Source of the DNA: Octopus sinensis | Lineage: Eukaryota | NCBI RefSeq assembly: GCF_006345805.1 | Contig: NW_021836134.1 | Location: 62,001-126,000, forward strand | Direction: 5' to 3' | Length of the DNA stretch: 64,000 nucleotides | Shown here: positions 3,398-61,789 of the stretch, piece after piece | Layout: each line of letters starts with the position of its first letter | How positions within the stretch are numbered: the stretch's first letter is position 1 | Made by a program: the position numbers and the translations under genes | The notes under the pieces: generated by a model | What the model was told of the DNA's origin: nothing | The model's input: only the letters and a program-made list of their open reading frames with translations | Databases searched by the model: none

Positions 3398-4483
3398 TTA
3401 CAAAAAAGAATTGTCAGTTAAATCTTCACATCGAATAATTGAGGGGTAATATCTCTCCACATGATTCAAGAATTCCATTAACTTTTGTCATTCTGAATTC
3501 GGTTATTGACAGTCCCTTTGCAGTTTTTTTATAATTTATAATTATATCCATATTTTCACGAACTCTTTTCTTTACTTCAGCTTTGAATGAACTCCAAGCA
3601 AGTTCTATTGGGTTGATTAAATAAGAATATGGCGCTAGTCTTAATAATTCACTATTTTCTCCTGGATTTATTACAGACTCAAGTTGACTGTGAATAGGAC
3701 CATTATCAATTACGAATGTTGGGTGTGTAACTCCTGATGCATCATATTCATTAATAAGTTGCTTAAACCATGTTTTACAGGACTCCCCTGTATATGAGCC
3801 TCTTCTGCACTTAAAATTATATATTTATGACGATGACATTGCAGCTATAAATGTAAATTTGATCCTCTGCTACTGGGTGCAAGAACAATAGACCGACATC
3901 CAATTTTTGAACGTCCTTCTTTACGACGACAAAATAAATTAAAATTCGACTCATCTATCCAAATTATAGTTCTTCCTTTAGATCTCGCATTCAAAAGATG
4001 TGTTAAATACTCCATTCTTTTAATTTTATTTTCCTCTGTATTCATGTTTATTGTGATTGTCTGAATTGATTTCAATGAAATTAATTGTCCATCAAGCCAA
4101 TTTTTTACTGTATTTAAACAAACAGTAACATTGAATTGAGCTTGAATTTTTTCAGTACATTCGACCAGTGAGATCTGGCAATCACATTTAATCCAACTTA
4201 ATAGAGCAGATATAATTTCTTCACTTTTTTTACTCCAAATCTTTCCTCCTTTAGGAAGTAATTCAATTTTTTTATTTTTAATCTAATAATATGCGGTCCT
4301 TTCTTTCACTCCCAAAGACCTGCATAAAGAGCGCCAATCTCCATCTCTATCGTATGTGTCTATGATCAATTTACGTTTTTCCATTGAATATTTTCCGTAA
4401 TGTCCTCTTCCTTGTCTGTTTATGCAAATGTCTTCTGTACAATTTTCTTGTGAATTTTCGGAGGCTTCTCGATTTTGTATCAT
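3398..4483 (-). pseudogene. IS630/Tc1-like DDE transposase, disrupted (one TAG plus frameshifts)
   Basis: HTH region KYSMEKRKLIIDTYD; catalytic motifs IIWIDESNFNLF, FVIDNG and LAPYSYLINPIELAWS; C-terminus NHVERYYPSIIRCEDL. Confidence 0.85.
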
Positions 4484-24524: not shown

Positions 24525-26840
24525 CAGTGGTTCTTAACCTTTTTTAAGTCAGCGCCCCCTTTTGACACAATTTCGAAGCTTCAAAATTTCAGCGCCCCCC
24601 TATTATTTAATTTATTTTTTTTCAATTATAGATTTATTTGGCAATTTTTTCGCCAATTGTTTCATTTTAATATTTTCGAATATTACTTATTATTTTTTTA
24701 GAATTAAAAGGGTATTCACAAACCAAACTTTTTTATATAAAAAAATTTTAGTGACTGCCTTGTGCTTGATGGGAATTTGTCAATCGTTTTATGTCAGCTT
24801 CAATAGTCGACAGACTTAGTCTCAAATCTCCTCTATTCACAATTTGTAATTTATTTCTTTTTTTGGTCAAAATATTAGAGACTGCACTAAATCCTCTTTC
24901 AACTAGATATGTTGAAGGAAATGCTATTATAAGTGTTTCAATTTCATTCCACAATAAAGGATATTTTTTTCTATGAGTAACCCAGAATTGTTGATATCCA
25001 TATTTGTTGAAAATGACTTTAGCTTCAAAGTCATATTTCAGATTTAATAAATTTTCTGTTATTTCTTGAGATAAATTAACGTTTTCAGTTTCAAATGGAT
25101 TTATATACCAATCAAAAAATTTTAAATTTTCTAAATCTTCAAAGCGGATTTTCATGTCATCTTTTAACATTTTTAGATGCAAGCAAAAGCATTCACAGTC
25201 AGAATCCGTTAATTTTTCGACCTAATAAATATTATTACAAAAAATAACCCCAAATTTTTGTAGATTTGGAAAATTAATAAAAATCTTTTTCTTAATATTG
25301 TTTTCATAAAGTTGTAATTTTTCAATAAAAGGCATAATAATTCCTTTTACATTTATTAAATTGATATTGTTTCCTTGCAAGCTAATATTTACTTGGTTGA
25401 TTTTATAAAAAATATCAGCTAGATAAGCTATATCAGCTTTCAATAAAATCAACTTACTAAAATGATTAAGGAATAATTACCTAAAAATTCTCTGCTCATG
25501 TAACTGACAAAATTCTAAGATTGAATCATACAATTCAAAAAATCGACACAAACAGTTTCCTTTTGAAAGCCATCTAACATGGGTATGCAAAAGAAGTCGT
25601 TCATAATGCTCATCGTTTTGTTCACAAATATGTCGAAATATTCTCGAATTCAATGGGTGCATTTTAATACGATTTATTGCACATATGACAACATTTAGTG
25701 ATTCATTCAGCCTCTCACTTAAATTTTTCGCAGCTAAATGCTGTCTGTGAATGACGCAATGGATTGTAAAAATATTCGGTACTTTTTCCTTCATATATGC
25801 CAAAAACCCACGATGAACTCCAACCATCGCAGGTGCCCCATCTGTTGAACAAGCAAAAATATTGCTAAGGGGTATTTCATGTTTCAAAAAATATTGTTCA
25901 ACAGTTTTGAAAATTGTTAATCCTCTTGTATCGAGTTCAAGGTGTTCAGAAAATAAAAATTCTTCTTGAATTACATCATTTTGATTAATATAACGTACGT
26001 AAACTAATAAAAGTGCAACACTATCGTTGAATGTCGATTCATCAATCTGAATTGAAAATTTTGTTGTTCTTAAAAATGCACATAGGGTTTCTTCGATATC
26101 AAATGCCATTTCATCAATTCTGGAAGAAACAGAACTATTACTCAAAGGAATTGATGAAATTATTTGTTCAGAATCACAATCAACCATTGAATTTAACACT
26201 TCTTTGATAGCTGGTAATATTAATGACTCTCCAATAGTATGAGGTTTTCCTGATTTCGCTATCAATTGCGATATTTTGTATGATGCTAATAGGCCTTTTT
26301 CAAGCATCTTCGAATTTTTGTAAATAGTTGATTAATCATAAGACGATTTTCATAATTATATTTCAGATTAGAAAAATAATTGATATCCGCATCAAGTTTG
26401 TCAGGATGACAAATCTTAAGATGATTTAGCATTCTTGAAGGCTTCATTCCTTCATTTGTAAAGACCTTTTTACACATAAGACACATTGGAAGTGAATTGT
26501 TATGGTCGTAGGGTATCACTCCAAACTTTAGGTATTCATCCGAATATATACGTCGTTTTACTTTTTTATCAGACATCTATAAAATATAATTAAAATATTT
26601 ATTAAAAAGTTCTAAAATATTAAATACAATTAACAAATATTTATAAATATTATCAGTGAATAATTTTTTTACGTACACACAAGACAATTTGAATTTAGAA
26701 TTAATAGAAAAGCACGTGATAATGATTTACAAAAACTAATAAAATATTTATAATAATTAAAAAAAATTAAAATTCCAGCGCCCCCCTAATATGTTCCAGC
26801 GCCCCCAGGGGGGCGCCAGCGCCCCCGTTAAGAATCACTG
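24525..26840 (-). mobile_element. hAT Buster-type transposon, copy 2, nearly identical to copy 1
   Basis: Same TIRs; 8-bp TSD GACTAGAG at 24517-24524 and 26841-26848. Confidence 0.95.
24748..26576 (-). CDS. Buster-type hAT transposase, about 592 aa after removing two introns and one homopolymer indel
   Basis: Zn-finger CLMC...HLKICH, FSIQIDEST, CSTDGAPAM, HCVIHRQHL, HTHVRWLSKG, STYLVERGFS. Introns at 25457-25480 (24 nt) and 25222-25248 (27 nt). Confidence 0.85.
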
Positions 26841-38014: not shown

Positions 38015-40625
38015 TTAACTTCTGAGAAGTTTGTTCCTCAGACGGAGGTCCTCGATATATGTGACAAAGTCCTTTTTGGTGATGATTCCACCACCTCACT
38101 ACACGACAGTCTTACCACATACGCACTTATTTTGGTGATCAAAACTTGCCGGATTCCCAACTTTTGGAACATTTCCAACGTGATGTGGATAGACCCGAAC
38201 ACAGTCATTGTCATTGGACTCTGTGGTTGGCCCAAAGACCTGACCTGGTCGAGGATGACGGAGAGTCTGGCCGACTTGTGCTGTTCCGGGCGAGGACCAG
38301 AAAAATAGACGATTGTGCTATCGGAAAATCCATTCAATCGGTCTGTCATTAAGTAGAAGGTGTACCCAGTGCATATTCGAGGTCTCTTCGATAAACAAAC
38401 CCCGCCAACACTTTGTAGTGCCTGGACACGACCACTGGAAATCCGTTATAGTTCGTTTCCTCGAGAATTTGTTCTGAAATGGAAAGAAATGAATACTGAT
38501 TTCGGAAATGGTCATTTTGTTCTGCTCGATGACAGTCAGTTCGGCCGAGTTGTCCCTGCGAGTGAATGCCCAACAAAACATTGCGTGAAGAACGTCATTG
38601 GCCGTGCCACTCTCGGAAATCTCGTCCTTTCCATCGAGGAATGGGAAGCCGTTCAGATGGATGTGTCGGTCGTATCTATGAAATAAAACCAGTGCCTACA
38701 TCCCCTCCTTCCCAAACCAGTCAGCAATCCACTTGCTGGTCATTGTGGCCATCATTATGGGGATTATGTAGGAAATCCCGCCAGTCATCTCGTACATAAT
38801 CACCACCAGGGACACTACTATAAATACTCAACAACACCAGTCATTCGGGTGACCCCCCCAAGTGTGGCGGCAGCTCCCACAAGCGCGTACACTCCGGGGT
38901 TGATCACAGCCACCAGAGAGGTCGAGTTGATGTAGAACGTCCTACAATGACCATAGTCCCCAACCGGGCAATCTGCTGCACTCCTATGCCCACGATTCGC
39001 CCCATTATGGCCCCCGCACAAATCGTGGGAATGAATAATCCAGCAGGCACCTTCGAATAAGTCCACACAACACCTTCAGTCCAAACGTGGTCACCGTGAA
39101 CACAAATTTGAGGACAAGGATGATGACCAACTGCCACATGGAAGTGTATATTCCAGCCCCAAGAGAAGGGTTCCCCTGACGGTCCTGCCCGACCGAGTAG
39201 TCCCATTGGTAGTCACTAAGACATGGAAAAGTCCACTACCAGAGTGGATTGGAATCTCCGACGTGGCAGGCAGCAAAGAGTTGTCGGATGAAGGAATTGG
39301 AGTCCTGACGAGTGAAGGAGAAGGGGTACGAGGCCAAGACAGTAACAAGAGTGACCACCACAACCTAAAATAGTAGGAAAGAGAGACCTCAGTAATAGGA
39401 AACCTCCCTATAAAAGAATTCTTTCTGTAGGCGCAGTATTTGACGTTAAGTCGAATAAAGAGAACTCCATAAAACCCCTGAATAGAGAGGAGAGACAACC
39501 CCGATTATGCCCAGGAGGAGGAAGGGAATTAGTTCGACGTAAGCAGTGGGATCGTCGTAGCCAATGTAAAACAGAATGTCCTGACCACCCCTGTTGACGC
39601 CCGACAGATGGACGGCAAATGTGGCCACCAATGCACAGAAGAAAGACCTCCAAATAGTCTTGAGGGGAAAAAAGTAGCTCACTTCTTCCAGGCTAAATAG
39701 AACCCCTCCCACAGGGGCACCAAAGGCCACCGAAACACCCGCAGCCACGGCCGAGGACAGAATCTGATAAGTGAGTCATCACACCTCTCTCTTCTTGACT
39801 TCATTCCGCCTGAACTTGGGAAAGAGTTTGGAAATAAGATTGCCAATCGAACAGCAAATCTGCACGAACGGACCCTCCTTTCCCAACGACAGTCCCCCGG
39901 CCGAAGACAGAACTATTCCAAAACATTTGATGATAAGTGTCCACGTGCTGAGGTACCCCCGAATGATGTAACCACTCAGAATGGTCTTCATCTGAAAGTG
40001 AGTGAAGACAATACCTCGGGAATGCCCGACCCACTGGCGTAGGGGGCGAGGAACTTAACCATCATGGCTGCGGCAGTAGTGTAGAGCACAGAGAGGAGAC
40101 AAAACATGAAATAGTCGAATATATATGCACCATTCTCCTTTCCCCCTGCCAATTCCGACCAGGGCTTCCACTGCCAGTCAGTCACTCCATTACATTGGGA
40201 CACGTCTTGGAGTCCACTGTGTTGTTGGCAGTCCAGCAGCAGTCCTCTCTCCCCAGTAGACGGTCGGATAGACAGATTCCATGCACAAGCGAGCCCATCC
40301 ACTTGTAGGACATATCGATATAGGCAGCCGTCAGTCCCGAAAGGACCCCCACGATAAGAATGCAGATCCAAGACGACGAAGAGTCGAAAATGTACTTAAA
40401 AAGTCCGACCGATGACTTTTTTGACTCGACTACAATTTGTCTATGACGAATGCGGTTTCGCTGAAAGTTCCGTTGCCAGTCGATCGTATGGAAGTCGTCG
40501 TATTTCACGGCTTCCATCATTTTCAGGTGGAAAGACCCCCGAGAATGGTCGGCTACTCCGTGGAGACATTGCCGTCCGTCCACGGCCACGTCAATGAACT
40601 CGTCGTCCGAAAGGTGCACGTCCAT
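38015..40625 (-). CDS. CLCN3/4/5: CLC-3/4/5-type 2Cl-/H+ exchanger with C-terminal CBS domains, about 15 tiny introns
   Basis: [20 protein letters not shown] (gating Glu), [10 protein letters not shown] (proton Glu), PAGLFIP, GGVTRMT, NGFPVVV, GIITKKD. Example introns: 40171-40193, 39992-40014, 39764-39784, 39216-39239, 38676-38699. Confidence 0.95.
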
Positions 40626-57560: not shown

Positions 57561-58948
57561 TGATATTGATTTAAACGCGTTCGGTAGCTCGTAGTGCAGG
57601 TTGCTCACAGATTCTTTATTTTTTATTAATTCACAAACAATGTCAATTAATAGCGTGTACCATTGATGATCCCGGTTATAGTAGTTTTATACTGGATCAC
57701 TTGTTGGATTAAAATAATAATTTAAGGAGACAATCTTTTATCACGAAATTGAATTCATTTTTCGAGTCAATCTTGGCCAGAATTCTTAGTGTACTTATCA
57801 ACGAATAAATTGACTAGCGCAAAGCATGGACTGGACTCCAGTTACAGCATAAGGCCTTCTTTTAGCTCTAAAGAAAAGAAAAAAATTTTCTTCGAGGACA
57901 ATATGGATTTAAATGCGACATATTAACTGAAGTAATTTTGAATTTAAATATGTACAACCATATTCTCTTTTTATGAATCCCATAAAAAGTATATTCTTTG
58001 TATAAAGCATAGGTTTTCACGAGAAATTCTCGCGGCGCAAATGCTAATAAAAAATAATCTCGCGGCACATAATCAAAATCAAAACATAATTATAAAATTC
58101 CAAATTCAAAATTTATTATTTTTACATAATTTTTCTATGTCTGGCTCAATATTTGATAAGGCCAGCCGCATTTCTGAATCTAAATCCAGTAGATTTTCTC
58201 GCTTATTTGTTTTAATGTTTTGTAATGCAGAAAATCCCTTTTCACACAAATAAGTTGTTGCAAATTGTAGAATGATCCGCATTGCTTTATCTGTTATTTT
58301 TGGAAATCTAGAACGAATTTTGATCCAAAATTCGCCAATATTTAATTCCGTATGTGATAATTTTAAGGTACGATCATTAAATAGTTCAATAAGCTCCATA
58401 TTTTCGAACAATGATAACTCATTACTATGACTAACCAAAAATAGATTCCGTATCTAAAACTAATTATTTAAAATAAATACCCAATCATATTTTTCAATGT
58501 CTATGTCTGGAAAATAATTATTGACTTTTTGTTCCAATGATGTCAAATGCTCATATATAAGACTTTGTATTATGGTACCGTCAGAATCTAAATTGGCTTT
58601 ATAAATTAGAATGCGAAACCATTAGTCTTAGGAAACATGCTAAAATCCCCACTTAATACTAGTCTTCTCCAATATGTAATATTCATTTTTAAAGCATTTA
58701 ACTTGTCCGTACAACTCAAAATTGTCTCATTATTTCCTTGCATGCTTAGATTCACATCATTCAATATCGAAAATATGTCCGTTAGATATGCTAATTTTAA
58801 TTTCCAATTCGAATTGCTGATCAATTCATGAAATTGATAGCATTGTTCTCTCGTGAAAAATTCAGCTATCGTGTCCCTTAATTCATACACTCTGGCCAGT
58901 ACCCTTCCCCGTGATAACCATCGTATTTCGGTATGTAACAATAAATTT

Positions 58949-60353
58949 GGTACTTTTGTCGAAGTGGTCGCAGTTTTTTTAGAAGATAATTAAAATTAAT
59001 TAATTTTTTTAGTGAAAAATAGATTATTTAATTTATAACCCTCTATCAATAATTTAAATGGTTATTAAAATTATTTAAAAATTTATTTAACCAATTTAGT
59101 CATTTTTAGTACGCGGCATCCAAATTCCAGGACTGTAGAAGGAATTTATGTCTTTTACAATCTGTGCAAAAGATTCCTTATAGTTCTGTATTTGTTTTCG
59201 CCACATAAATTCTGAAAAAATAACTAACTAAAAAAACCTGCGAAATAAGATCCCAGATGATGTCTTACAGCTCCTCTTTGAGCTTTATTCTTGCATTTTG
59301 CACTTCCCCACATTCGTTCTACTGTCTGGGTGTGCACTCCCGTCGTTGGATCCACAAAGAATTTTCTGAATATATTATATTTCCTTACTTATGGTTAACG
59401 GTTTCGTGTGTGTAGCCGTTTTCAACCAATTGATCAGTTGAATACCCTAAATGTTAATCAAATAATGCTAACCTTTCCAGCAGTCACTATAAATAATGCT
59501 TCCCACCTCGACATATCGAATTACTAGACTGAGCAGTGTTTCTCTGCTCCTATCCGCGACTGGTTGCAGAAAACACTGTTTGGTGGCTCGACAAATACCA
59601 CCGAAGACCCACTGTTTTGGTAAAACTCTTCCAGAGTTGTTTTTCCGTTTGGAAAACATACTCTCGTCTACCTCCACAATCATACCAGGACCACCTGAAA
59701 TAAACATTAATAATACCAATTTTGCCGTCAGATCTTTTAACAAGTGCGTCCACACAGACTTCACGTAAAAACATAGCCCAATCGACATATGTATGTTCAC
59801 CCCAATTGTATTCGTGATGAAGCCATTTGAAGGTATGCCTATCGTAACTCCATAAGTATATGTAGGCGATGACATCCTCAAATGGCAATCTACAATTCTC
59901 TAACCAGGTATCTAGAATTATTTGAGAGAAATTATACCTTTTTTAATAGAACATTGGACTCTACAACCAACTCTTGAGCATTTCCAATTGAGCTTCGGTC
60001 CCAAGACTAATTCCATCTGATGTCCCTTCGGACATATACGTGATTTTGAAAGGATATCCACATTTTGCAGAAAATGCACTGCATCCTCCTTACTTATTGG
60101 GAGCTGTCGGAATTTGATGTTGCATAAGTCCACAACAGAATTTTCCATGTGACCTATAGTGCCAGTTTATATCAATATTAGGTACATGCTCGCCATAATA
60201 TTAAAAAAATTAGAAAATAAATTAGTAAAAAATTTAATAATATTTTAAATTATTGATAGAGCGACTTAAATAAAATATAATATATTCCACCTCAAAAATT
60301 ATTAGATTTTTTAAAAGGCCTAAAAAAACTGCGACCACTTCGACAAAAGTACC
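58949..60353 (-). mobile_element. Merlin (IS1016/IS1595-related) transposon with perfect TIRs of about 31 bp
   Basis: TIR GGTACTTTTGTCGAAGTGGTCGCAGTTTTTT at both ends. Confidence 0.93.
59096..60148 (-). CDS. Merlin transposase, intact 309 aa over six exons
   Basis: Exons 60148-59938, 59911-59717, 59694-59473, 59446-59389, 59365-59238 and 59211-59096 total 930 nt. Splicing restores KIG|GPGMIVEVDE, QWVFGGI, IYSDCWKG|Y, VNHK|KFFVDP, HTQTVERMW and FA|EFMWR. Confidence 0.92.
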
Positions 60354-61789
60354 ATAAAGGTACTTTTGTCTTAGTAAAGAAACCTGAATTTAATCATATA
60401 ATAAAACAATATACAAGTCCATTAAGTCTTCCAGACATAGATGGTGCCCCATCTGTGCATACACCAACACAATTTTTAAAGGAAATATTATGTTGATTAA
60501 AATAATCAAATTGTACATATCAATTGCACGAGTAGTAGTAACTAGTGCCTTGCAGAAAAGAAATTGTTCAATAATACTTCTGACTTTTCAGTACGAATAT
60601 AAATAAGCAACTGTGCAATTCCTGCTACGTCAGTTGATTCGTCAATTTGCAATGAATATAAATTGTTTTTCATTATAGATACCACTTTTTCTTCAATATC
60701 AAACGACATTGTACTAATTCTTCGACAAATAGTATTGTCAGAAAAGGGAATTTTCAATAATTTTTTTTCAAATTCCACGCCAAACATTGTTCGGACTATT
60801 AATTTGCATGCTGGAAGGATAAGATTTTCGGCAATTGTATGAGGTTTCATTTTCTTGGCAATCAATTCCGATACTAGATAAGAGCACTTTACTGCATCTT
60901 CTGATTTTCCAAATGATTTTGAAAATGATTTTTTACTTACTCTAAATATGTATATATATAATTATTAACACTACCTATGTTTTTTGCTTAATTCTTTAAA
61001 ATAATCAATTGAATAATCTTTATATTCCGGGTGCTTAGATAAAAAATGTCTACGAAGTTTAGATGGAACCATTGATTCATTCGACAACACCTCCATGCAA
61101 ATCAGGCACTGTGGTAAACTATTTCCAGTGCCACAACAGTCAAAACCCATAGATAAAAAAGATGATTTGTAATGACGAATACTCCGATGCACAGACATAA
61201 CAAATAGCAACGTGATTATAATTTATTATAATTGTTTCATTATAAATAATTTTTAAGTTAAAAATTAAACAAAAAATAAGTAAATATAGATCTTCACGCG
61301 GCACATTTTTTATCGTCCTGCGGCACAAAAATGTGCCGCGGCGCAGTGTTTGAAAACCTCTGGTATAAAGCGTCTTGTGATTTCTGAAAATTTTGTTTTG
61401 ATTTAACATTATTGCTTTCGTAAAAACTTTAATGCTTGTTTATATACAGTTTAAAAGCTAATTTTTTGACCCCTGACGCTAATGCTTAATTCATTAACAC
61501 TAATTCTCAAAAAGTCGACACTAAAGTTTGCGTTTTCTACGATTTTTAGCCATTGCAAATCAACAAGACACGTGAAGGCCATGACTGTCAGAAACAGAAT
61601 AAAATCTTGTTTTTTGTTGAGACAGAAACAGTAAAAGAAGATTTTGTAATTTTGGCGGAACTAGTTTCAACATACCATAGCTTCATCAGCTTTGCCCCTC
61701 TGACCCTCGGGACTTAAATTTGCACTGAAAAAAAATCCACCAAACAGAACATCAGCAAAATCTTCTCTCTACCAAAGACTTCTCCTGCA

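What the first reader, a model, noticed from the sequence alone, without database searches (positions are those of the whole stretch)
58949..60353. Intact Merlin transposase split by five 22-26 nt spliceosomal introns
The ORF track shows only fragments. Removing five GT-AG introns (59912-59937, 59695-59716, 59447-59472, 59366-59388, 59212-59237; 26/22/26/23/26 nt) gives an uninterrupted 309-aa ORF, and the junctions restore conserved Merlin motifs. The TIRs are perfect. An IS1016-related transposon here has the same intron size class and similar density as host genes. Inference: the element is long resident and depends on the host's miniature-intron spliceosome, or the genome is actively inserting tiny introns into transposons. 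Splicing could also regulate transposase by cell type, as with the P element germline-specific intron.
Basis: partly seen in the sequence, partly recalled or inferred. Interest (0 to 1): 0.85.

Follow-up and report, generated by a model that had tools for sequence, protein, structure and literature searches.

The report
Merlin transposon with five tiny introns
A young, probably still mobile Merlin "jumping gene" has its transposase gene split by five 22-26-base introns of the same size and density as the surrounding genes; it sits on a contig of a tiny-intron parasite (most likely a dicyemid) inside an octopus genome assembly, and three related families share intron positions, so this transposon lineage has lived in that genome for a long time.

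Summary
Window 58949-60353 (- strand) is a 1405-bp Merlin/IS1595-type DNA transposon with perfect 32-nt TIRs starting GG. Four intronless Merlin proteins from other organisms each recover exactly these five introns by spliced alignment.

The window is not octopus DNA. It lies on a 399-kb unplaced contig of a tiny-intron bilaterian, almost certainly a dicyemid, co-assembled with Octopus chromosomes. A neighbouring CLC gene has 13 introns of 21-24 nt (one uncertain call of 32 nt), about one per 180 nt. That matches Merlin's one per 186 nt.

Family A is young. Copies are 96-100% identical, many are deletion derivatives, there are 221 TIR termini, none on the chromosome scaffolds, and TSDs are 8 bp. 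The lineage is old. Three families, 33-35% divergent at non-synonymous sites, form one clade and share intron positions. The nearest outgroups and the octopus's own Merlins have none. The spliced frame is under purifying selection (dN/dS about 0.2).

No RNA evidence was obtainable, and P-element-like regulated splicing is untested. Verdict: a new variant of a known kind, moderately interesting.

The parts
58949..60353 (-). Complete Merlin family-A element, 1405 bp
   Evidence: TIR to TIR. 130 DNA matches of 96-100% identity elsewhere in G000.
60322..60353 (-). 5' terminal inverted repeat, 32 nt, starts GG
   Evidence: Identical to the reverse complement of 58949-58980.
58949..58980 (-). 3' terminal inverted repeat, 32 nt
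60215..60353 (-). 5' subterminal imperfect inverted repeat (element positions 1-139; 78% to the other end, 58949-59088)
   Evidence: Self inverted matches.
59938..60148 (-). Exon 1 coding part (aa 1-70 plus 1 nt), ATG at 60148
59912..59937 (-). Intron 1, 26 nt, GT..AG, phase 1. Position shared by families A, B, B' and C.
59717..59911 (-). Exon 2, 195 nt
59695..59716 (-). Intron 2, 22 nt, phase 1. Position shared by all families.
59473..59694 (-). Exon 3, 222 nt, encodes D145 and D206 of the DDE triad
59447..59472 (-). Intron 3, 26 nt, phase 1. Position shared with family C.
59389..59446 (-). Exon 4, 58 nt
59366..59388 (-). Intron 4, 23 nt, phase 2. Position shared with family C.
59238..59365 (-). 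Exon 5, 128 nt, encodes catalytic E245. Families B and C have an extra intron just after this residue; family A does not.
59212..59237 (-). Intron 5, 26 nt, phase 1. Position shared with family C.
59096..59211 (-). Exon 6 coding part, ends with TAA at 59098-59096
58941..58948 (.). Target-site duplication ATAAATTT (intact copy)
   Evidence: Paralogous hAT copies read ...AATAAATTTATA... at the empty site. Six other copies have clean 8-bp TSDs.
60354..60358 (.). Remaining 5 nt (ATAAA) of the second TSD copy
60359..60370 (.). 12-nt fragment of a Merlin terminus (GGTACTTTTGTC) abutting the element. It is followed by a 187-bp deletion of the carrier hAT.
58008..61362 (-). Carrier element: an internally deleted hAT transposon in which the Merlin is nested. 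TIRs are CATAGGTTTTCA / CAGAGGTTTTCA and the 8-bp TSD is GTATAAAG (58000-58007 and 61363-61370). It is absent from the allelic contig C8853.
   Evidence: hAT transposase ORF pieces appear.
38045..40619 (-). Comparator, not part of the element: host CLC-3/4/5-like gene with 13 introns of 21-24 nt (one uncertain call of 32 nt)

Best explanation
The feature is an autonomous cut-and-paste DNA transposon of the Merlin superfamily (IS1595/IS1016-related DDE transposase). It lives in the genome of a tiny-intron bilaterian parasite, most likely a dicyemid, whose contigs were co-assembled with its octopus host.

The element has 32-nt GG-terminated TIRs and makes 8-bp target duplications. Its 930-nt transposase gene is split into six exons by five 22-26-nt GT-AG introns. 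The host's U2-type spliceosome, which handles such ultra-short introns in ordinary genes, must remove them to make the 309-aa enzyme (D145, D206, E245). Because no intron length is a multiple of three, any unspliced intron truncates the protein.

Shown: the anatomy; the exact junctions; the match in intron size and density with a neighbouring host gene; the recent amplification of family A; the sharing of intron positions among three diverged families of one clade; and the absence of introns in outgroups.

Inferred:
- The introns are spliced in vivo.
- They were acquired after this Merlin lineage entered the parasite's ancestors.
- The most parsimonious path is three introns (aa 71, 136, 246) on the stem, three more (210, 229, 272) on the A+C branch, and loss of 246 in family A.
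- The lineage has therefore persisted and diversified vertically while depending on host splicing.
- Whether the introns were born tiny or shrank together with the host's introns is open.
For: Anatomy and junctions.

Merlin hallmarks:
- PF12762 only.
- GG-TIRs.
- 8-bp TSDs in six copies.

Activity:
- 130 DNA matches at 96-100% identity, many of them internal-deletion derivatives.
- 221 TIR termini against 0 in the control.
- Two copies encode the identical intact protein, one more differs by a single residue, and one is open to aa 307.
- The window copy is nested in a hAT that is absent from the 98-99.6%-identical allelic contig.

Host intron class: the CLC gene has 13 introns of 21-24 nt, one doubtful call of 32 nt. 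D. japonicum has 6.2 introns per 1155-nt CDS, and ultra-short introns occur only in dicyemids and myxobolids among animals (PMC6736024, PMC13644364).

Old lineage:
- Families B/B' have introns at aa 71, 136 and 246.
- Family C has introns at 71, 136, 210, 229, 246 and 272.
- Family A has introns at 71, 136, 210, 229 and 272.
- Phases are the same and the intron sequences are unrelated.
- The families form one clade with SH-aLRT 97.
- Families A and C share the first 9 nt of the TIR.

Selection on the spliced frame: dN/dS 0.19-0.26 at dS 0.5-0.6 between C subfamilies, while intron lengths differ by non-multiples of 3 (31/27, 34/27, 33/26).

Intronless outgroups:
- P0001: 879-nt ORF on a 982-nt contig.
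- Planthopper: 843-nt gene for 280 aa.
- Strongyloides: 828 nt for 275 aa.
- Octopus-chromosome copies: continuous ORFs.
Against: - There is no RNA evidence. The protein database held nothing closer than 51% identity to the spliced product, so no spliced transcript was seen.
- Several full-length copies carry 1-nt frameshifts. These could be decay or long-read homopolymer errors.
- The sampling of relatives is biased towards single-ORF predictions, so intron-bearing outgroups could have been missed.
- The branching order of A, B and C is unresolved in the tree.
- The dicyemid identity of the contig is inferred, not shown with a reference sequence.
- The window copy's own TSD is incomplete on one side.
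Confidence: 0.8

Rival explanations
1. Shrinkage rather than gain in place. The Merlin lineage already carried ordinary-length introns, either before it reached this parasite or early in the parasite's ancestry. They shrank to 22-34 nt along with all the other introns of the genome.
For: Dicyemid introns are thought to be shortened versions of conserved ancestral introns (PMC6736024, PMC13644364). Intron ages cannot be read from 22-34-nt sequences that are unrelated between families.
Against: Every relative examined outside the clade is single-exon at all six positions. This includes the sister sequence P0001, the insect and nematode relatives, and the octopus copies. The A/B/C pattern needs gains at more than one time.
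Confidence: 0.2
2. Recent horizontal arrival. Family A, already carrying its introns, entered this parasite genome recently from another tiny-intron organism, for example a co-infecting dicyemid species. The element in this genome would then not be long resident.
For: Family A copies are 96-100% identical, and the window copy sits in a polymorphic insertion. Several dicyemid species commonly share one host (PMC12953835).
Against: Two other diverged families of the same clade, with shared intron positions, sit on the same class of contigs. The clade as a whole is therefore resident. Bursts of young copies are normal for an active family.
Confidence: 0.1
3. Regulated splicing. One or more of the introns is retained in some cell types or stages, so that transposase is made only in germline-like axoblasts, as with the third intron of the P element.
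For: Every intron shifts the frame if retained. Retention of intron 1 would leave a 70-aa N-terminal peptide. Nothing more supports this.
Against: No data bear on it. The introns look like ordinary host introns in size and boundaries.
Confidence: 0.08
4. The segments are not spliced. The element is a dead relic and the open frame after removal is a coincidence, or the segments are removed at the DNA level.
For: No transcript evidence was available.
Against: - Four independent queries give identical junctions, and the reversed control fails.
- Junctions align without gaps.
- Positions are conserved across families with frame-shifting length changes, and dN/dS is about 0.2.
- The same GT-AG class is seen in a host gene.
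Confidence: 0.02

Closest known systems
Merlin superfamily DNA transposons (Feschotte 2004; survey in PMC8101967), related to bacterial IS1016/IS1595
   Same: - DDE_Tnp_IS1595 domain with a D-60-D-38-E triad.
- No Zn_Tnp_IS1595 domain.
- TIRs that start GG.
- 8-bp TSDs.
- Compact 1.2-1.4-kb elements.
- Nearest relatives are animal 'ISXO2-like' transposases at 45-51% identity.
   Different: The transposase gene carries 3-6 ultra-short introns at host-like density. All other Merlins examined here are single-exon. The Merlin survey paper does not mention introns at all.
Intron-containing transposase genes of other superfamilies (P element, Ac/hAT, CACTA; CACTA exon/intron evolution in PMC4158355)
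   Same: Transposase production depends on host splicing. Intron number differs between related families through gain and loss.
   Different: The superfamily differs. The introns are 22-34 nt, below the usual animal minimum. There is no evidence here for tissue-specific splicing.
Ultra-short introns of dicyemid (and myxobolid) host genes (PMC6736024, PMC13644364)
   Same: GT-AG boundaries, a length of about 21-27 nt, a weak extended consensus, and a density of about one per 186 nt of CDS.
   Different: These introns are in a mobile element of bacterial-IS ancestry. They cannot be conserved ancestral metazoan introns and must be lineage-specific.
Use of transposon-derived (domesticated) genes as a zero-intron baseline for intron gain (PMC3369469)
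   Same: The logic is the same: an intronless ancestral state makes every intron a gain.
   Different: Here the carrier is a still-mobile multicopy transposon clade, not a domesticated single-copy gene.

Membership tests
Merlin superfamily (eukaryotic IS1595/IS1016-like transposons) | Transposase with a DDE_Tnp_IS1595 (PF12762) catalytic domain | tested here: met
   E=5e-19, 69.3 bits against a cut-off of 27, residues 150-276.
Merlin superfamily (eukaryotic IS1595/IS1016-like transposons) | Conserved DDE triad, with blocks 1-2 about 50-70 aa apart | tested here: met
   D145 (VEVDES), D206 (YSDCWK) and E245 (QTVERMW) lie in columns conserved in relatives. Spacing is 60 and 38 aa. Criterion from PMC8101967.
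Merlin superfamily (eukaryotic IS1595/IS1016-like transposons) | TIRs of 24-462 bp with terminal 5'-GG | tested here: met
   32-nt perfect TIR starting GGTAC. Families B and C also start GG.
Merlin superfamily (eukaryotic IS1595/IS1016-like transposons) | 8- or 9-bp target-site duplication | tested here: met
   Clean 8-bp TSDs in six other copies. The window copy has ATAAATTT on one side and only ATAAA on the other, next to a 187-bp deletion.
Merlin superfamily (eukaryotic IS1595/IS1016-like transposons) | Lacks the N-terminal Zn_Tnp_IS1595 domain | tested here: met
   PF12762 is the only Pfam family at E<=0.01.
Merlin superfamily (eukaryotic IS1595/IS1016-like transposons) | Mobility (cut-and-paste transposition) | not testable with these tools
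   Indirect evidence only:
- Near-identical copies at different sites with different TSDs.
- Deletion derivatives.
- 221 TIR termini.
Spliceosomal (U2-type GT-AG) ultra-short introns of the host class | GT..AG boundaries and a length within the host's intron class | tested here: met
   Five of five are GT..AG and 22-26 nt long. Introns of the host CLC gene are 21-24 nt.
Spliceosomal (U2-type GT-AG) ultra-short introns of the host class | Removal restores the reading frame and collinear homology | tested here: met
   (four independent queries, no stops or frameshifts).
Spliceosomal (U2-type GT-AG) ultra-short introns of the host class | Position and phase conserved while sequence and length drift | tested here: met
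   dN/dS of the spliced frame is about 0.2.
Spliceosomal (U2-type GT-AG) ultra-short introns of the host class | Spliced junctions observed in RNA | not testable with these tools
   No transcript data could be reached. No near-identical spliced product is in the protein collection.
Spliceosomal (U2-type GT-AG) ultra-short introns of the host class | Branch-point A residues upstream of the AG, as described for D. japonicum | not tested
   A-rich stretches are visible by eye in all five introns. No statistical test was done.
P-element-type regulated (tissue-specific) intron retention | An intron retained in somatic cells and spliced in the germline | not testable with these tools
   No expression data.
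Introner-type introns (introns created by copies of a mobile element) | Many near-identical intron copies | tested here: not met
   The five introns are unrelated to each other, and the introns at the same positions in families B and C are unrelated to them. A genome-wide search was not done because 22-26 nt is too short.

The most novel reading that the evidence does not exclude
The Merlin clade records stepwise creation of ultra-short introns inside a mobile element of intronless ancestry. The most parsimonious path is three introns, then six, then five. The end point is the host's own density of about one intron per 186 nt.

If so, dicyemid genomes do not merely keep shrunken ancestral introns. 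Either they actively make new ones, or they select for host-like exon lengths and intron-dependent expression. Transposons that persist there would become 'naturalised' to host gene architecture, and could be used to date and measure intron gain in this lineage.
Probability: 0.4. Interest if true: 0.7.

Novelty: new variant of a known kind. Interest (0 to 1): 0.5.

Why it matters
Introns shorter than 30 nt were only recently accepted as real in animals (PMC13644364). In dicyemids they have been described as shortened versions of conserved introns.

A transposon clade descended from intronless relatives now has 3-6 such introns at conserved positions and at the host's density. That gives a clean, datable set of lineage-specific introns. 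With it, whether and how intron gain happens in an ultra-short-intron genome becomes directly testable.

It also predicts a simple host-range barrier. The genomic element should be inactive in any cell that cannot splice 22-26-nt introns, including its octopus host, whose chromosomes carry none of its 221 termini.

A practical point follows too. A public octopus chromosome-level assembly contains hundreds of kilobases of parasite contigs, which can mislead annotation and claims of horizontal transfer.

Tried and rejected
(1) Ciliate origin or a ciliate genetic code. Rejected: the standard code with a TAA stop fits, and the neighbouring genes are bilaterian.

(2) Parasite-to-host horizontal transfer of this Merlin into the octopus. 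Rejected:
- All DNA matches and all 221 TIR termini lie on small unplaced contigs.
- None lies on the chromosome scaffolds.
- Octopus-chromosome Merlins are only 34-42% identical, intronless and in another clade.

(3) Ab initio splicing of the host CLC gene by longest open path chose wrong introns. It was replaced by homology-guided spliced alignment.

(4) A Tc1/mariner-like remnant at 3426-4282 looked as if it had a tiny intron. Reading it showed a 1-nt frameshift plus a stop instead.

(5) Looking for a named parasite protein. The CLC query found nothing above 52% identity, so the parasite's proteins are not in the collection or are withheld.

(6) Looking up the sample of the sister sequence (SRR28250917) in the literature found nothing.

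(7) The allelic contig did not provide an empty site for the Merlin itself, because the whole carrier hAT is absent there. Paralogous hAT copies were used instead.

(8) Not run: structure prediction, Rfam searches and tRNA searches. They would not bear on the question.

Full report
**Observation.** On the minus strand, window 58949-60353 is a 1405-bp element bounded by perfect 32-nt inverted repeats, GGTACTTTTGTCGAAGTGGTCGCAGTTTTTTT. Read without splicing it gives only ORF fragments, the longest 143 and 130 aa. Removing them gives an open frame of 309 codons from ATG 60148 to TAA 59098-59096. The exons are 211/195/222/58/128/116 nt and the intron phases are 1,1,1,2,1. The product matches Pfam DDE_Tnp_IS1595 and nothing else (E=5e-19).

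To avoid circularity I wrote a protein-to-DNA aligner that allows GT..AG introns of 15-60 nt. I ran it with four intronless Merlin proteins from other organisms. Each recovered exactly the same five introns with no stop or frameshift. The reversed sequence scored 38, against 511-770. In a multiple alignment, all junctions fall in gap-free conserved motifs: KIG|GPG, SDCWK|GY, VNH|K and YFA|EFMWR.

**Where the window comes from.** The assembly G000 has 2.72 Gb in 13,516 contigs. It is a mixture. Chromosome-size scaffolds (C1, C2, C18, C29) carry chloride-channel exons tens of kilobases apart. The window's contig C12605 (399 kb), C8853 and C11519 carry compact copies.
- An intact Merlin ORF on scaffold C25 is 88% identical to an Octopus bimaculoides protein.
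- 2.72 Gb is the size reported for the Octopus sinensis chromosome-level assembly (cited in PMC12564688).
- The window's CLC-3/4/5-like gene (40619-38045, minus strand) aligns to a mollusc homologue over 773 residues, with 13 GT-AG introns of 21-24 nt and one uncertain call of 32 nt.
- Its best database hits are all bilaterian and reach only about 50% identity.
- Among animals, introns this short are known only from dicyemids and myxobolid myxozoans (PMC13644364).
- The window's GC content is 37.8%, against 36.7% for Dicyema japonicum. It is repeat-rich, as that genome is (49%). A second contig is 99.2% identical to it, in line with the reported heterozygosity of 1.24% (PMC6736024).

I therefore take the window to be a dicyemid contig co-assembled with its octopus host. 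This is an inference, at about 0.9.

Merlin has five introns in 930 nt, one per 186 nt. The CLC gene has about one per 180 nt. D. japonicum is reported to have 6.2 introns per 1155-nt CDS, again one per 186 nt.

**Membership.** The Merlin criteria come from PMC8101967, and all that could be tested are met:
- the IS1595-type DDE domain without the IS1595 zinc-finger domain;
- the triad D145/D206/E245 with 60- and 38-aa spacing;
- GG-terminated TIRs;
- 8-bp target duplications in six other copies: cttatttc, catatgct, caatagtc, tcgaggac, aaatattt, aaaacaaa.

Relatives at 45-51% identity are animal 'ISXO2-like' transposases from nematodes, spiders and hemipterans.

**Family A is young and probably active.**
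- The genome holds at least 130 DNA matches at 96-100% identity, many with internal deletions that keep both ends.
- There are 221 TIR termini, against 0 for the control pattern. The sorted list begins at contig C126, so none is on the octopus chromosome scaffolds.
- Of twelve long copies, two encode the identical 309-aa protein, one differs by a single residue, and one is open to residue 307. The rest have 1-nt frameshifts that may be long-read errors. Ten keep all five introns; in the other two the aligner did not call intron 2.
- The window copy is nested in a 1.9-kb internally deleted hAT element (58008-61362, TSD GTATAAAG). The whole hAT is absent from the allelic contig C8853.

**The lineage is old.** A protein search of the genome found further Merlin families on small contigs, and many intronless copies on the octopus chromosomes at 34-42% identity. 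Spliced alignment gave these results:
- Families B and B' have introns at aa 71 (phase 1), 136 (phase 1) and 246 (phase 2).
- Family C has introns at 71, 136, 210, 229, 246 and 272.
- The window's family A has introns at 71, 136, 210, 229 and 272.
- Phases are identical. The intron sequences are unrelated and 22-34 nt long.
- The octopus copies have none.

These are true elements with their own GG-TIRs, and families A and C share the first nine bases of the TIR. In a maximum-likelihood tree the parasite families form one clade (SH-aLRT 97). An intronless sequence (P0001) is its sister, and the octopus copies sit in a different clade. P0001, a planthopper gene and a Strongyloides gene are all single-exon by arithmetic: 879 nt for 292 aa, 843 nt for 280 aa and 828 nt for 275 aa.

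Between family C subfamilies the spliced frame has dN/dS 0.19-0.26 at dS 0.5-0.6. Homologous introns differ in length by non-multiples of three (31/27, 34/27, 33/26). That pattern is expected only if these segments are removed before translation.

**How it most likely works.** The element is transcribed. The parasite's spliceosome removes five ultra-short introns. The 309-aa DDE transposase binds the GG-terminated TIRs, excises the element and inserts it with an 8-bp duplication. Abortive gap repair produces the many deletion derivatives.

The intron pattern is most simply explained as follows. Three introns were gained on the stem of the clade (71, 136, 246). Three more were gained on the A+C branch (210, 229, 272). 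Family A then lost 246 precisely. That is seven events, against ten if all six were ancestral.

The anatomy, junctions, conservation and selection are shown. Splicing in vivo, the order of gains, and whether the introns were born tiny or shrank with the rest of the genome are inferred. No RNA data could be reached, and the protein collection held no product closer than 51%.

**Comparison with what is known.** Transposase genes with introns are ordinary in other superfamilies, and their intron numbers evolve (PMC4158355). Transposon-derived genes have been used before as a zero-intron baseline for intron gain (PMC3369469). Ultra-short introns in dicyemids are established (PMC6736024, PMC13644364).

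What I did not find described is a Merlin, or any transposon of this genome type, with 3-6 ultra-short introns at host density and with positions conserved across families. The Merlin survey does not mention introns, and the six papers pairing Dicyema with 'transposable element' showed no such element in their titles or abstracts. I rate it a new variant of a known kind, with interest about 0.5.

**Side observations.**
- At five loci, including the window (60342-60370), a Merlin end abuts a short inverted fragment of a Merlin terminus at a constant 5-6-nt spacing.
- In the window this goes with loss of 3 nt of the TSD and 187 bp of the carrier hAT, as shown by paralogous hAT copies. I cannot decide between insertion of a second copy targeted to the end followed by deletion, and templated snap-back repair.
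- Tandem arrays of the right-terminal 276 bp occur elsewhere.
- A second hAT family in the window (24748-26577) also has tiny introns. One (25480-25457, 24 nt) was confirmed by spliced alignment. Tiny introns in transposase genes are therefore not peculiar to Merlin in this genome.

Noticed in passing
whole window (G000:C12605:62001-126000); also C8853 and C11519: The window is not from the animal that makes up most of the assembly. G000 mixes Octopus chromosome scaffolds with contigs of a tiny-intron bilaterian, most likely a dicyemid parasite, present as two haplotypes about 99% identical. The octopus scaffolds have CLC exons tens of kb apart and a Merlin ORF 88% identical to O. bimaculoides. 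Parasite contigs in a host reference assembly can mislead annotation and claims of horizontal transfer.
   Followed up: partly
window 58008-61362: The Merlin is nested in a 1.9-kb internally deleted hAT element (TIRs CATAGGTTTTCA / CAGAGGTTTTCA, TSD GTATAAAG). The hAT is present on this contig and cleanly absent from the allelic contig C8853, where the empty site reads ctttGTATAAAGcgtcttg. It is therefore a recent insertion polymorphism.
   Followed up: yes
window 60342-70; C8597:118561 and 374688; C9061:262137; C12471:229227: Abutted Merlin ends: GACAAAAGTACC, then 5-6 nt, then GGTACTTTTGTC. This occurs at five loci and in none of the controls. One partner is always a remnant of 12-81 nt. In the window it goes with loss of 3 nt of the TSD and 187 bp of hAT. 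It may be end-targeted insertion followed by deletion, or snap-back repair; this is unresolved.
   Followed up: partly
L052 (C8597:118.5-119.3 kb), L053 (C2502:395.2-396.0 kb): The right-terminal about 276 bp of the element (positions 1130-1405) occurs as head-to-tail tandem arrays of two to three units next to short deletion derivatives.
   Followed up: no
window 24748-26577 (- strand): A full-length hAT transposase gene of another family also has tiny GT-AG introns. One (25480-25457, 24 nt) was confirmed by spliced alignment to a paralogous, uninterrupted hAT peptide. A second, of about 27 nt near 25220-25246, was seen by eye only. This copy also has a 1-nt frameshift in an A-run near 26315.
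   Followed up: partly
window 38045-40619 (- strand): Compact CLC-3/4/5-like H+/Cl- exchanger gene: about 773 codons in 2.6 kb with 13 introns of 21-24 nt. It is at most 52% identical to any protein in the collection, and all top hits are bilaterian.
   Followed up: yes
G000 chromosome scaffolds, e.g. C25:19779886-19780719 (L045), C27:10839548-10840381 (L046): The octopus itself carries many intronless Merlin copies, several with intact 288-290-aa ORFs. They are 34-42% identical to the parasite's element and fall in a different clade.
   Followed up: partly
e.g. C8460:56544-57230, C8694:445106-445792, C8702:1023716-1024402: Pairs of TIR termini recur about 670-715 bp apart. This suggests an amplified non-autonomous (MITE-like) derivative of family A. 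It was seen only from coordinates.
   Followed up: no
L003, L005-L010, L012 (family A copies): Many otherwise 99-100% identical copies differ by single-base indels, often in homopolymers. These may be long-read assembly errors rather than real decay.
   Followed up: no
window 3426-4282 (- strand); also 10.9-12.4 kb, 19.6-22.3 kb, 28-31.5 kb: The window holds a Tc1/mariner-like transposase remnant with a frameshift and a stop (not introns), and several reverse-transcriptase/LINE-like ORFs. Well over a third of the window looks transposon-derived.
   Followed up: partly
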